A program made the position numbers and the translations under genes. Positions 45,801 to 48,800 of a stretch of 64,000 nt of DNA are shown in pieces (the stretch's first letter is position 1; each line of letters begins with the position of its first letter). The stretch is from Guillardia theta CCMP2712. Taxonomy: Eukaryota; Protista; Cryptophyta. The notes beneath the pieces were generated by a model. That model did not search any database, had not been told where the DNA came from, and saw only the letters and a program-made list of their open reading frames with translations. The stretch is from contig NW_005434631.1 in NCBI RefSeq assembly GCF_000315625.1, positions 441,891-505,890 on the forward strand. Reading direction: 5' to 3'.

Positions 45801-48800
45801 CGCGTGTGGAGTGACTGCGTGCTTGTGGAGGCTGCTGGAGCAGCTGAGGGAGGAAGACGACGTGAAGGGGATGCGACACCTCAAGCGTTTCGCGGAGCTG
45901 ACAGGAGACAAGTACCTCGCGCTTGAGTGCTCGCTGCTGCTGGGAGAGGTCTCGGGGCTGGACGACCTGCGGGGCTTCTCCCTCCGGCTCAGCCTCGCGC
46001 CCACATGGGACAAGAAGTTCAGGAGAGCTCCAATGCCTTCGGCGTTCTTCTCCATCGTGAACCCCTCGCAGGAGGAGGAGGAGGATGGGCAAGGGGAGAC
46101 GAGGAGGTTCACCTTCTCCCTGCAGAACTCGGGGGAGGGATGGCTGCAGGAGATCAGAAGCTCGGCGTCGACGCTGATCCAGCAGCTGAAGGAGGGGAGG
46201 GAGGGGACGGCGAAGTCTCCCTCCTCCTTGTCCAGCTGGTTCTCTCATCGCCTCTCGGAGGACTGGAGCGCTGGGGAGGACAAGTCCAACAGGCCCCCAG
46301 CAGCCCCGACAGTACCGCAGCGGTCGCCTGCCTCCTCCGACTTCTCCCCATCTCGCGCCCCCAGCGAGTCGGCAAGGACTGAGCCTGACGTGGACGAGTT
46401 CGGGTTCTCGATCCGGCCGGACGAACGAGCTCCGGACTCGAACCCCTTCGGGTCGGCCGAATTGTTCGGGGAGGAAGAGGAGGACGCCGGGCAGAAGCCC
46501 CAGCTGCTGGTGAGGATCCGGTCAGCTGAGGAGTCGAAGGTGGCGGACGCAGACGAGCTGCTGCATGCCGTCAAGTCGATGTCGCTGTCGGCGGAGGGGA
46601 ACGAGACGAACATGGCCGTGCGAAACATGCTCGACATCGGGCTCGGGGCTGGAGCTTCGCTGTTCAGCGAGAAATCGAGGAGAAGGGCTGGCTCGCGCAC
46701 TGCTGACTCGAAGCATGCATCCACTAAGAATACGCCGATGTAGGAACGAGAGGGAGGAGGAGGAGGAGGAGGAAGGAGAAGGGAGAAGAGGAGGAGGAGG
46801 AGGAGGAGGAGGAAGAGGAGGTTCAGCAAGCTTGACTTCTCTGCTCCTCAGAGTTTCGCCGATGGTCTCTATCGTGGAGCACGAGGACATGCCGCACTTC
46901 CCCCCTGCCGAACCCTCGAGTACCCCCAGCTGACCTCGAGCTGGACGGCTGACTTGTGGCAGGCGACTCCTTCTCGAACATGATCTTCGACTTCGATCCC
47001 TTCGCGGCCGAGAGCTCGAGCGGAGGATTCAGAAACGAGTTTGACAATCACTTCGGTGCTCCTGCTCTTGCCCCTTTCTCTGCCCCTGCCCCTGCTGCTC
47101 TTGCTCTGTCATGCTCTCTTTGTTGCTAACAACTTGTAGGCTTTGGTGATCCCTTCAGTGCCTTTGTTGGTGACGGAAAGCTCGCGGAGGAACAAGAAGG
47201 AGAATCATCCAGGTTGATTCCCCTCCTCCTCCTTCGCCTCCTCCTCCTCCTCCACCACCACCACCACCACCACCACCACCTCCTCCTCCTCCTCCTCCTT
47301 TCCATGGACTCCCCACTCCCCCTCACTCCCCACCTCCCTCTCTCGTCTCTCTTCCTCCCCTCCTCTCCTTCTCACCTCATCGCCCCCCTTCTCACTCCCC
47401 AGCTCCCAAACTTGGTCTTCTTCTAACATCATGCAGCGACTTCATGCCCTTCCAGCAGGACGCGAGCGCCCAGGAGGGCAGCGGGGACATGGAGTCTGGG
47501 CAGGGTTCAGAGAGCAGCGAGAGGTCGATGCAGTCGGACAAGGGGAAGGGGAGGACGAGCTTCGGGTCTGTCGAGGACTGGGTGGTGCAGAACCGGGTTG
47601 TGAGCGACTCTGCTCATCGGGGGATTTTCTCGAGCTGGGATCCTTTCGAGGAACACTCCAGAGACGCACCTCTTCCCTCCTCTGCCTCCCCTCCTCTCTC
47701 TCCCGGTCCCTCCTCCTTCCCCCCCGATGCTCCTGCTTCATCCTTTCCTGCACCACAAGCCTCGGCTCCCCCCTCCGATGCTCCTCCTCCCTCTCCTCCC
47801 CAGCTCGTTTCGGCTGATCCCCCTGCCTCAACGGATGACTCGATCCACGTCTCTTTCGCTTCATTCCCTCTTGCTCCTCCCTCTGCCTCCTCTTCTGCTG
47901 CCCCTCGTTCTACTCCCCTGCCTCCTTCCTCTCCTCCTCCCTTTTCTGCTCCTCCTCTCCCTCCCTCTGCTCCTCCTCCCCCTCCTCCATCCTCCCCTCC
48001 TCCCCCCTCTTCCTCAATTCTCCGCACCTCTGCCCCTCCTCCTCCTCCTTCCGCTCCCCCTCCTCCTTCCGCTCCTCCACCTCGCCCATCTGTCCCCCCT
48101 TCCCCCTCGTCTCGTCCCCTTCCTCCGTCTTCTCCTCCCCCACCTCCTGCGGGAGCTCCCTCCCCCTTCGCCTCGGATGACCGACAAAACATCGCACAAG
48201 AGGAGAGTGGGGGAGGGGACGAGGAGGCTCGAGCGAAGTCGGAGAGTCAGGAAGGCGTTGCCGCCTCCCCCCTGGTTTCTCCTCCAAGTTTTCATCCTCT
48301 TCCCGCGTCAGACCCGCATCAAACAGGTGCAAGGAGCAGAGTAGAAGTTAACCGTCTGCTAACCCGCATGCCAGCAGGCGCGAAGGAGGAGGAGGAGGAT
48401 AAATTCAGTCAACCCCCTCCCTCCTCCTCGCCAACCGAGGTCGCAGCATTCTCCGTCCTCGCTCCCTCCCACCATTCCGGGGCAGCTGATCATGAGCTGG
48501 AAGACCAGGGAGGCAAGTGGCAAGGAGGGAAGGAGGAGCAGAAGCAAGAGGAGGCCGCGCATGTCGGCATCGAGGATGGGAAGGAACAGGGAATGGAGGA
48601 CGAGGAGGTTGGAGGTGTTGCTGTGCATGCAAGTTTGGAGGGCAGTGAGATACAATTGCCGGCTCCTCCTCTCGCTGGACAGAGCGGTAACAGCGCCCTT
48701 GTTCACCTCCTGGCCCTTCTGACGGATGTCGGTCTGTTGTCACCAGCAGGAGGAGATGGAGGAGGAGGAGATGGAGGAGGAGGAGATGGTGACTTCAAAG

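What the first reader, a model, noticed from the sequence alone, without database searches (positions are those of the whole stretch)
46384..46590. FCHO/muniscin AP2-activator (APA)-like segment inside a WD40-solenoid coat protein
Seen: PDVDEFGFSIRPDE - acidic stretch - PQLLVRIRS - ADADELLHAVKSMSLS. Established, from memory: the FCHO1/2-SGIP1 linker that opens AP2 has three blocks, VDEEG(Y/F)SI(K/R)P, an acidic run plus K(F/Y)xIxIKP, and ASxDELKxSIGNIxLS. All three appear here in order, but on a propeller/solenoid protein resembling TSET/TPLATE TTRAY (TWD40) subunits rather than an F-BAR protein. Inference: an ancient adaptor-activation module carried by the TSET coat, linking TSET to AP2/clathrin endocytosis outside opisthokonts.
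Basis: partly seen in the sequence, partly recalled or inferred. Interest (0 to 1): 0.8.

Follow-up and report, generated by a model that had tools for sequence, protein, structure and literature searches.

The report
AP2-activator-like motif on TSET scaffold
The disordered tail of a cryptophyte alga's TSET coat scaffold protein (TTRAY1) carries a conserved copy of the motif array that animal FCHO proteins use to switch on the AP2 endocytic adaptor, so this supposedly animal-only switch may be an old TSET part.

Summary
Window 46384-46590 (+) encodes PDVDEFGFSIRP, then NPF, an acidic run, KPQLLVRIRS and ADADELLHAVKSMSLS.

**What the gene is.** It is Guillardia theta GUITHDRAFT_110128, which Hirst et al. 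2014 already list as GtheTTRAY1, a TSET scaffold. Transcript contigs confirm that it is spliced. The real tail runs to 48940 and adds DPF, FxDxF and a terminal WVSFGD.

**Similarity to FCHO.**
- The tail's best match among 177,635 distinct PDB sequences is the FCHO2 linker (E 0.15).
- A profile of three orthologue tails hits only FCHO2-linker chains (E 7e-4).
- Flanking disordered segments hit nothing.

**Conservation.**
- The blocks are conserved in two distinct metagenomic orthologues.
- Diphylleia TTRAY1 matches co-linearly (1 of 2000 shuffles score as high).
- By eye, Thecamonas TTRAY1 has the module, and Arabidopsis TWD40-1 has part of it.
- I saw no such module in Phytophthora, Echinamoeba, or the part of Dictyostelium I read.

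**Most likely function.** It is an adaptor-docking motif array that couples TSET to AP2. Binding is untested, and the target could instead be TSET's own core.

**Novelty.** No paper in the searchable library reports an APA-like module in TTRAY or TWD40 proteins. One relevant paper could not be read. I class this as a new variant of a known kind.

The parts
43201..44577 (+). Exon 1 of the TTRAY1 gene (N-terminal beta-propeller region). The likely start is ATG 43201; the public model starts at 43375.
   Evidence: The ORF is open from 43177. Transcript contigs reach 43189-43214. Weak WD40-propeller Pfam hits. P0001 maps from 43375.
44578..44625 (+). 48-nt GT..AG intron that removes an in-frame TAG
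   Evidence: Two runs (X1, X2) hold contigs that skip exactly these 48 bases. The public model uses an acceptor 3 nt further on.
44626..46739 (+). Exon 2: second propeller, alpha-solenoid, then a disordered tail with the APA-like module
   Evidence: 100% identical to P0001 residues 418-1105. The AF2 model shows beta-rich sequence then a helical solenoid at 672-849, pLDDT 70-86. Foldseek top hits are beta'-COP and the COPI leaf.
46384..46419 (+). N1-like block PDVDEFGFSIRP
   Evidence: Aligned to FCHO2 PDVDEEGYSIKP. D, G, S, R and P are invariant in three orthologues.
46441..46449 (+). NPF motif (a typical EH-domain ligand), at the place of FCHO2 NHF in the N2 block
   Evidence: Invariant in three orthologues. 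Aligned to FCHO2 'eNhFy'.
46468..46485 (+). Acidic run GEEEED (N2-like)
   Evidence: Four invariant Glu. Aligned to the FCHO2 SDSDSEDEE run.
46495..46524 (+). N3 strand-like KPQLLVRIRS
   Evidence: Aligned near FCHO2 PKKYRIEIKP. K, P and I are invariant in orthologues. Low-confidence AF2 model shows a strand at LLVRIRS.
46543..46590 (+). N3 helix-like ADADELLHAVKSMSLS
   Evidence: Aligned to FCHO2 ASLDELKVSIGNITLS. Low-confidence AF2 model shows a helix here. The E..L pattern is kept in orthologues.
46627..46686 (+). Strongly conserved block MLDIGLGAGASLFSEKSRRR, function unknown, not part of the FCHO APA
   Evidence: 13 invariant positions in three orthologues. Similar strings are KLGELGVGARRRARRR in Thecamonas and KLGDGLGLTMSRTKS in Arabidopsis TWD40-1.
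46740..46851 (+). 112-nt GT..AG intron holding the apparent stop TAG (46741-46743) and a (GGA)n repeat
   Evidence: Three transcript contigs stop matching at 46739. The public protein continues past this point. Splice sites checked.
46852..47212 (+). Three short exons (46852-46919, 46963-47055, 47140-47212) encoding IFDFDPF and FGFGDPF (DP[FW] and FxDxF motifs)
   Evidence: Mapping of P0001 and GT..AG borders. Motif positions.
47437..48940 (+). Last coding stretch: a disordered Pro-rich tail with a third DPF (SWDPFEE, 47636-47647) and the C-terminal WVSFGD (48887-48904). The public model splices out three in-frame pieces; whether they are introns is open.
   Evidence: Open frame of 501 codons. 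Annotated pieces. The C-terminal GGWVSFG motif recurs at the end of a downstream ORF in the relative's locus L003.

Best explanation
The segment is a real, selectively maintained short-motif array in the disordered C-terminal tail of Guillardia theta TTRAY1. TTRAY1 is the alpha-COP-like propeller/solenoid scaffold of the TSET endocytic complex.

The array matches, block for block, the N1, N2 and N3 blocks of the FCHO/SGIP linker (the AP2 activator, APA). In animals, N1 and N2 dock on the C-terminal domain of AP2 mu2, and the N3 strand plus helix dock on the beta2 trunk.

In this protein the array is followed by DP[FW], FxDxF and WxxFxD motifs. These are the classic ligands of the AP2 alpha-appendage, and they stand where FCHO has its LFGPxL block. 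An NPF, a typical EH-domain ligand, lies inside the array.

The most likely mechanism is that plasma-membrane-bound TSET uses this tail to capture AP2. The appendage motifs would catch AP2 first, then the APA-like blocks would bind the core. This would hold or open AP2 at nascent endocytic sites, which is the job FCHO does in animals.

Shown here: the sequence, its splicing and transcription, its conservation, its similarity to the FCHO2 linker, and the TTRAY1 identity. Inferred: the binding partner and the activating effect.
For: - FCHO2 linker is the top PDB match for the tail, across all blocks.
- Orthologue profiles hit only FCHO2-linker chains, E 7e-4. Flanking disordered controls hit nothing.
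- Invariant residues cluster in the blocks while the spacers vary in length and sequence.
- The same array occurs in P0009/L003 and in L001.
- Diphylleia TTRAY1 tail matches the cryptophyte-clade profile co-linearly; 1 of 2000 shuffles score as high.
- Thecamonas TTRAY1 has LVDAEGYVVRP, then ARPAAIRVRIR, then KLGELGVGARRR.
- Arabidopsis TWD40-1 has SSSDEEGVTKPKKLQIRIREKP, a helix-like stretch and a DPF, in the same alignment columns.
- The block roles in FCHO2 come from PMC9054013. The appendage motif definitions come from PMC5694535.
- DPF, FxDxF and WVSFGD are present in the tail. WVSFG is conserved in L003.
- TTRAY1 identity rests.
Against: - No binding data exist.
- Statistical support is moderate. 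The single-sequence E-values are 0.15, 0.96 and none, and the Diphylleia tail alone does not find FCHO2.
- In N1 the second acidic residue is Phe in Guillardia. That is one of the acidic positions in the FCHO2 stretch that contacts mu2.
- The FCHO C block LFGPxL is absent.
- I saw no such module in Phytophthora sojae TTRAY1, Echinamoeba, or the aligned part of Dictyostelium TTRAY1.
- Dergai 2016 argues that non-holozoan AP2 lacks the residues that make a tightly closed state needing an activator.
- The Guillardia AP2 subunits were not examined.
Confidence: 0.6

Rival explanations
1. The module works inside TSET. TSET and AP2 are paralogous: TCUP corresponds to mu2 and TPLATE to beta2. The N1/N2-like blocks could bind the TCUP mu-homology domain, and the N3-like strand and helix could bind the TPLATE trunk. 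That would lock or regulate TSET itself. On this view FCHO inherited the module and retargeted it to AP2 only after TSET was lost in opisthokonts.
For: - The module sits on a TSET subunit in several lineages.
- TSET, AP2 and COPI share ancestry (PMC4031984).
- Dergai 2016 finds that residues supporting the closed state of AP2 are holozoan-specific.
Against: - The tail is packed with motifs defined as AP2 alpha-appendage ligands: DP[FW], FxDxF and WxxFxD.
- TCUP was found in only one of 33 cryptophyte libraries (PMC12167817), yet the N1-like block is well conserved in the cryptophyte-clade orthologues.
Confidence: 0.2
2. The module has the same function as the FCHO APA but a separate origin. 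Short linear motifs that fit conserved adaptor surfaces arose independently in TTRAY1 tails and in opisthokont FCHO linkers, so the likeness is convergent rather than inherited.
For: - Short motifs in disordered regions evolve readily.
- The similarity is limited to about 70 residues with moderate E-values.
- The module is patchy among TTRAY1 proteins.
Against: - Four elements appear in the same order and with similar spacing (N1, aromatic plus acidic run, basic strand, amphipathic helix) in FCHO of animals and fungi and in TTRAY1 of Cryptista, CRuMs, Apusozoa and plants.
- FCHO already carries one TSET relic, the TCUP-derived mu-homology domain.
Confidence: 0.25
3. The likeness to FCHO is a by-product of acidic, low-complexity composition. 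On this view the conserved blocks do something unrelated to adaptors, for example EH-domain binding through NPF only, or membrane binding through the basic KSRRR block.
For: - The region is acidic and disordered.
- Some single-sequence searches are not significant.
- A spurious acidic-repeat hit to a bacterial protein appeared in the big search (P0003).
Against: - The strongest identities are in non-acidic positions (G[FY]S[IV][KR]P, KP..I.I[KR]).
- Only FCHO2-linker chains are found in the whole PDB at E<=10 with the three-sequence profile.
- Flanking disordered controls find nothing.
- The shuffle control for Diphylleia preserves composition.
Confidence: 0.1

Closest known systems
AP2 activator (APA) / linker blocks N1-N2-N3 of FCHO1, FCHO2 and SGIP1 (Hollopeter 2014, PMC4215536; Zaccai 2022, PMC9054013)
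   Same: - The order and spacing of the blocks are the same.
- N1 is identical to human FCHO2 at 9 of 12 positions.
- It lies in a disordered region and is followed by alpha-appendage ligands.
- An aromatic residue plus an acidic run, a basic beta-strand and an amphipathic helix follow N1, as in FCHO2.
   Different: - It is carried by a propeller/solenoid TSET scaffold, not by an F-BAR/mu-homology muniscin.
- The organism is a cryptophyte, whereas the APA was reported as holozoan-specific.
- It has NPF where FCHO2 has NHF.
- The LFGPxL C block is replaced by DPF, FxDxF and WxxFxD.
- It has an extra conserved LDIGxG..SLF..KSRRR block.
- Binding has not been tested.
TTRAY1 / TWD40-1, the alpha-COP-like scaffold of TSET / TPLATE complex (Hirst 2014, PMC4031984; Yperman 2021, PMC7909872; bioRxiv 10.1101/2024.10.07.616965)
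   Same: - The same protein family: this gene is Hirst's GtheTTRAY1.
- It has beta-propellers plus an alpha-solenoid.
- Arabidopsis TWD40-1 has an acidic Ser run, KPKKLQIRIREKP, a helix-like stretch and a DPF in the aligned linker.
   Different: - Guillardia has the full N1-like block, which Arabidopsis lacks or has only as DEEGVTKP.
- Guillardia appears to lack the C-terminal all-alpha, COPI_C-like domain of plant TWD40-1 and ends in a long disordered tail.
- No paper I could read mentions an APA-like module in these proteins.
Fungal FCHO homologues (Syp1 family) linker
   Same: The fungal sequences in Hirst's TCUP alignment show VVDSEGYSIPPPD, then NPRIRVDIK and a helix-like stretch. That is the same N1, strand and helix order.
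   Different: - They sit on an F-BAR/mu-homology protein.
- Dergai 2016 scored only about 15 residues as APA-like and judged them not functional as an APA.
Disordered tails of endocytic pioneers such as Eps15 and epsin
   Same: They carry arrays of DPF, NPF and related motifs that bind AP2 appendages and EH domains.
   Different: Those proteins lack the N1-N3 core-binding blocks and are not coat scaffolds.

Membership tests
FCHO/SGIP AP2-activator (APA) linker | N1 block, consensus [VL]D[EAS][ED]G[YF][ST]I.P | tested here: met
   PDVDEFGFSIRP against FCHO2 PDVDEEGYSIKP. Orthologues have LVDAEGYSIRP and HLDEDGFSVRP. One acidic position is Phe in Guillardia.
FCHO/SGIP AP2-activator (APA) linker | N2 block: an aromatic residue followed by an acidic/Ser run | tested here: met
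   NPFGSAELFGEEEED aligned to ENHFYSSSDSDSEDEE. The run is Ser-rich in P0009 and in L001, Glu-only in Guillardia.
FCHO/SGIP AP2-activator (APA) linker | N3 block: basic strand (PKKYRIEIKP) plus amphipathic helix (ASLDELKVSIGNITLS) | tested here: inconclusive
   The pattern is present and aligned, and a strand and helix are predicted at low confidence. The profile alignments to FCHO2 stop at the start of N3.
FCHO/SGIP AP2-activator (APA) linker | C block LFGPxL (alpha-appendage platform ligand) | tested here: not met
   No LFGPxL in the tail. DPF, FxDxF and WxxFxD motifs are present instead. According to PMC9054013 and PMC5694535, DPF and FxDxF use the same platform site and WxxFxD the sandwich site of that appendage.
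FCHO/SGIP AP2-activator (APA) linker | Significant sequence similarity to known APA sequences | tested here: met
   Profile E 7e-4, and only FCHO2-linker chains are found. The reverse search, an APA profile against this proteome, could not be run.
FCHO/SGIP AP2-activator (APA) linker | Lies between a membrane-binding domain (F-BAR or MP) and a mu-homology domain of a muniscin | tested here: not met
   The host is TTRAY1, with propellers and a solenoid. Pfam finds no F-BAR or mu-homology domain.
FCHO/SGIP AP2-activator (APA) linker | Binds the AP2 core and shifts it to the open state | not testable with these tools
   Needs pull-down, ITC, a protease-sensitivity assay or the fcho-1 rescue assay.
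TSET TTRAY1 / TWD40-1 | [quoted passage not shown] | tested here: met
   Weak propeller Pfam hits. AF2 model is beta-rich up to about residue 670, then a solenoid at 672-849. The first propeller is low confidence. Foldseek top hits are beta'-COP 3MKQ and the COPI leaf.
TSET TTRAY1 / TWD40-1 | Sequence homology to TTRAY1 orthologues rather than to true alpha/beta'-COP | tested here: met
   - phmmer hits to Diphylleia and Echinamoeba proteins.
- hhalign gives 99.1% probability, E 7e-19.
- The shared GLLEPL and YD..R[IV]S..L signature is seen in Arabidopsis TWD40-1.
- No Pfam COPA/B hit reaches its curated cut-off.
- Published assignment as GtheTTRAY1.
TSET TTRAY1 / TWD40-1 | Physical membership of a TSET complex with TPLATE, TSAUCER, TCUP, TSPOON and TTRAY2 | not testable with these tools
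   Hirst 2014 lists Guillardia TPLATE and TTRAY2. A later survey found no complete TSET in cryptophyte libraries.

The most novel reading that the evidence does not exclude
The AP2-activator segment of opisthokont muniscins (FCHO, SGIP, Syp1) may be a relic of the TTRAY1 tail. If so, muniscins are chimeras of two TSET subunits, the TTRAY1 tail module and the TCUP mu-homology domain, joined to an F-BAR domain. [quoted passage not shown]
Probability: 0.4. Interest if true: 0.85.

Novelty: new variant of a known kind. Interest (0 to 1): 0.75.

Why it matters
How AP2 is switched on outside animals is an open question, and so is how TSET/TPLATE communicates with AP2. The published view is that the APA arose in holozoans together with a closed AP2 (Dergai 2016), and that the only TSET relic in FCHO is the mu-homology domain (Hirst 2014).

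A conserved APA-like array on TTRAY1 gives three things:
- a concrete, mutable sequence to test TSET-AP2 coupling in plants, where KPKKLQIRIREKP in TWD40-1 is an obvious target
- a candidate origin for the FCHO linker
- a reason to re-examine whether AP2 activation is ancient

If binding fails, it remains a clean example of a deeply conserved short-motif array of unknown use in a coat scaffold.

Tried and rejected
**Searches that found nothing useful**
- Word-index protein searches with the 688-aa piece, with the tail region of P0001 and with Diphylleia P0004 found nothing but the queries themselves. Length limits, WD40 swamping and the huge database size explain this.
- The exhaustive search gave only 8 hits. 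One of them, P0003, is a bacterial repeat protein matched through acidic composition, and I rejected it.
- The first metagenome scan with the tail profile found nothing. The second found only L003, a near-copy of P0009.
- The ESM Atlas gave only generic protocoatomer leads for the body and nothing for the tail.
- Pfam has no family covering the tail.

**Folding and alignment**
- Folding the single sequence was uninformative.
- Adding Diphylleia to the tail alignment misaligned the strand block, so that alignment (A6) was not used for a search.

**Tails that did not support the module**
- Diphylleia and L001 tails alone do not find FCHO2 in the PDB.
- P0008, Echinamoeba and P0006 tails are not significant against the cryptophyte-clade profile. 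My by-eye likeness for P0008 is therefore not counted.

**Steps I could not take**
- A reciprocal search with an APA profile, and shuffle tests on the Thecamonas and Arabidopsis tails, were left out.
- Bashline et al. 2015 on TWD40-2 could not be read. From unverified memory it may mention a likeness between a TWD40 protein and the muniscin middle region. If so, the plant side has a partial precedent.
- Contamination or transfer from an animal was considered and rejected, because the gene has cryptophyte-style short introns and a TTRAY1 body.
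Full report
**1. The observation**

| Element | Sequence | Coordinates |
|---|---|---|
| N1-like block | PDVDEFGFSIRP | 46384-46419 |
| NPF | NPF | 46441-46449 |
| Acidic run | GEEEED | 46468-46485 |
| Strand-like block | KPQLLVRIRS | 46495-46524 |
| Helix-like block | ADADELLHAVKSMSLS | 46543-46590 |

**2. The gene**

The two large ORFs, 43177-44622 and 44626-46740, are in one frame and separated by a single TAG. Contigs from two sequencing runs, tentatively labelled RNA, skip exactly 48 bases with GT..AG ends, 44578-44625. 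The gene is therefore spliced and apparently expressed.

Contigs from three runs stop matching at 46739. That is a GT donor two bases before the apparent stop.

The public protein for this gene is P0001, 1344 aa. It is XP_005831004.1, GUITHDRAFT_110128, from Guillardia theta CCMP2712. It continues through three short exons and a long last stretch that ends at 48940.

Two details of the public model look doubtful:
- Transcript contigs reach 43189-43214, upstream of its start at 43375, where the frame is open from an ATG at 43201.
- The transcripts use the acceptor 3 nt before the annotated one.

The stretch 47437-48940 is one open frame. The annotation removes three in-frame pieces from it. I could not decide whether these are introns.

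**3. What the protein is**

- Hirst et al. 2014 list jgi|Guith1|110128 as GtheTTRAY1, one of the two propeller/solenoid scaffolds of TSET.
- The N-terminal part gives weak WD40-propeller Pfam hits.
- An exhaustive phmmer search finds distant relatives in Diphylleia, in Echinamoeba and in unnamed records.
- Some of those relatives give sub-threshold COPA/B and COPI_C hits, as expected for alpha-COP-like but non-COPI proteins.
- A profile of the cryptophyte-clade sequences matches a profile of those relatives at 99.1% probability, E 7e-19.
- An AF2 model on eight sequences is beta-rich up to about residue 670, then forms a helical solenoid at 672-849 with pLDDT 70-86. Only the second propeller and the solenoid are reasonably confident.
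- Its best Foldseek matches in the PDB are yeast beta'-COP and COPI leaf subunits, followed by IFT-A proteins.

**4. Is the FCHO likeness real?**

- phmmer of the 147-aa tail against 177,635 distinct PDB sequences puts the FCHO2 linker first (7OG1 chain G, E 0.15). The alignment runs from PDVDEEGYSIKP to ASLDELKVSIGNITLS.
- The closest orthologue is P0009, with P0002 and the near-identical L003 copy. A second, distinct one is L001. Both are from JGI metagenomes, taxon unknown.
- These orthologues keep every block: LVDAEGYSIRP and HLDEDGFSVRP; NPF; an acidic run; LKPVIRLTIKS and LKPVIRVTIRA; a helix with E.L...MKQM.
- The spacers differ in length and sequence.
- Profiles of two and of three tails hit only FCHO2-linker chains in the whole PDB, best E 7e-4.
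- The two flanking disordered segments of P0001 hit nothing at E<=10.

Against this:
- P0009 alone scores E 0.96 and L001 alone scores nothing.
- The profile alignments cover N1, N2 and only the start of N3.

I take the similarity as real but moderate in strength.

**5. How the blocks map to FCHO function**

| FCHO2 block (PMC9054013) | Residues | Binds | Guillardia counterpart |
|---|---|---|---|
| N1 | 314-328 | C-terminal domain of mu2, at the BR3 phosphoinositide site, through acidic residues | Present; one acidic position is Phe |
| N2 | 334-357 | Lies next to N1 on mu2 | NPF plus acidic run |
| N3 strand and helix | 358-397 | Hydrophobic troughs of the beta2 trunk | KPQLLVRIRS plus helix-like stretch |
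| C (LFGPxL) | 423-438 | Alpha-appendage platform, the site used by DP[FW] and FxDxF | Absent; DPF, FxDxF and WxxFxD instead |

The continuation of the Guillardia tail has IFDFDPF, FGFGDPF (both DPF and FxDxF), SWDPFEE and a terminal WVSFGD. WVSFGD fits WXX[FW]X[DE], the ligand of the alpha-appendage sandwich (PMC5694535).

The orthologue tails have many DPF repeats. The locus L003 ends a downstream ORF with GGWVSFGED.

The NPF inside the array, invariant in the three orthologues, is a typical EH-domain ligand. This last point rests on my own knowledge.

Together this is the motif repertoire of an AP2-engaging endocytic pioneer, placed on a coat scaffold.

**6. How old is it?**

I read TTRAY1 tails from Hirst's untrimmed alignment and from proteins returned by the search.

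| Lineage / protein | What is there | Basis |
|---|---|---|
| Thecamonas trahens | LVDAEGYVVRP, a Ser-rich stretch, ARPAAIRVRIR, then KLGELGVGARRRARRR | By eye |
| Diphylleia rotans | LLDEEGYRIGKAP, acidic Ser runs, KKPKKIGITIRPKEP |; matches the cryptophyte-clade profile co-linearly, 1 of 2000 composition-preserving shuffles as high |
| Arabidopsis TWD40-1 | SSSDEEGVTKPKKLQIRIREKP, a helix-like VNKLKEAAKTFKLG, GDGLGL and a DPF, in the same alignment columns as the Guillardia module | By eye |
| Phytophthora sojae | No such module seen | |
| Echinamoeba | No such module seen | |
| Dictyostelium | No such module in the aligned part I read | |
| P0008 | Not significant | |

On the opisthokont side, the animal, fungal and other FCHO-family sequences in Hirst's TCUP alignment show the same order of elements. 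Examples are VVDSEGYSIPPPD followed by NPRIRVDIK, and SDDEDDGTVKPKFMVKISN.

This pattern fits a module that was present in ancestral TTRAY1 and was lost or eroded in some lineages. It also suggests that the FCHO linker descends from that module. The Thecamonas and Arabidopsis comparisons are by eye only, because I had no reference for those sequences.

**7. What is known**

- Hollopeter 2014 defined the APA and noted that it is absent from yeast Syp1.
- Dergai 2016 searched eukaryote proteomes with an APA profile and reported it as unique to holozoan FCHO.
- The TSET and TPLATE papers I could read do not mention an APA-like stretch in TTRAY or TWD40 proteins.
- Full-text searches combining TWD40 with APA terms found none.
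- Bashline 2015 was not available.
- A 2025 survey finds TSET reduced in cryptophytes, with TCUP in only one library. This mildly favours AP2 over TCUP as the partner of the N1-like block.

**8. Verdict**

The module is conserved and FCHO-like.

The mechanism I favour is adaptor docking and activation that couples TSET to AP2. It is an inference from motif content. The main rival is an intra-TSET role.

It should not be filed as a member of the muniscin APA in the strict sense. The host architecture differs and the C block is missing. It most likely works like the APA and may share its ancestry.

Noticed in passing
window 43189-43375 and 44626-44628: The public gene model (P0001) starts at ATG 43375. 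Transcript contigs reach 43189-43214 and the frame is open from ATG 43201, which would add 58 residues with a WD40-blade look. The transcripts also use the acceptor at 44625/44626, not the annotated one 3 nt later (a NAGNAG site).
   Followed up: partly
window 47597-48508, about 48686-48745, 48818-48862: The three annotated introns in the last coding stretch are all in frame and free of stops, so 47437-48940 is one open frame of 501 codons. The largest piece encodes a Pro-rich region (runs such as PPPPSAPPPP) and a third DPF. The length of one 5114-nt transcript contig fits retention, but this could not be checked.
   Followed up: partly
window 46627-46686; L001 about 4970-5040; L003 ORF 1181-5140: The block MLDIGxGxxSLFxxKSRRR just after the APA-like module is the best conserved part of the tail. 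It has look-alikes in Thecamonas (twice) and in Arabidopsis TWD40-1. It has no counterpart in the FCHO2 linker and no known function.
   Followed up: partly
L003 6709-7455: Downstream of the relative's TTRAY1 ORF lies an ORF encoding a long Glu/Lys/Ala-rich, coiled-coil-like stretch. It ends in GGWVSFGEDGQDFDGGDSDEFG, the same C-terminal motif as in Guillardia. The relative's gene probably continues through introns beyond the called protein.
   Followed up: no
window 42170-42330, 42650-42700, 43050-43110, 46745-46820, 47230-47300: There are several trinucleotide and dinucleotide repeats in the intergenic and intronic DNA around the gene: (CAT/CGT)n, (CT)n, (CCT)n and (GGA)n. The reads tool masked some of them.
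   Followed up: no
Hirst 2014 supplementary TCUP alignment (files 6 and 7): Fungal FCHO homologues carry N1-like, strand-like and helix-like elements in order, which is more than the 15 residues credited to them by Dergai 2016. The claim that the APA arose in holozoans may need revisiting independently of this gene.
   Followed up: partly
Hirst 2014 supplementary TTRAY alignment, Tetrahymena TTRAY1 tail: The ciliate TTRAY1 tail shows repeated NPF-containing units (NPFAFSMPPII, NPFVFQMPTII), a GDPF and a basic strand-like KKKQIKFKVKK. This suggests endocytic motif arrays are common in TTRAY1 tails.
   Followed up: no
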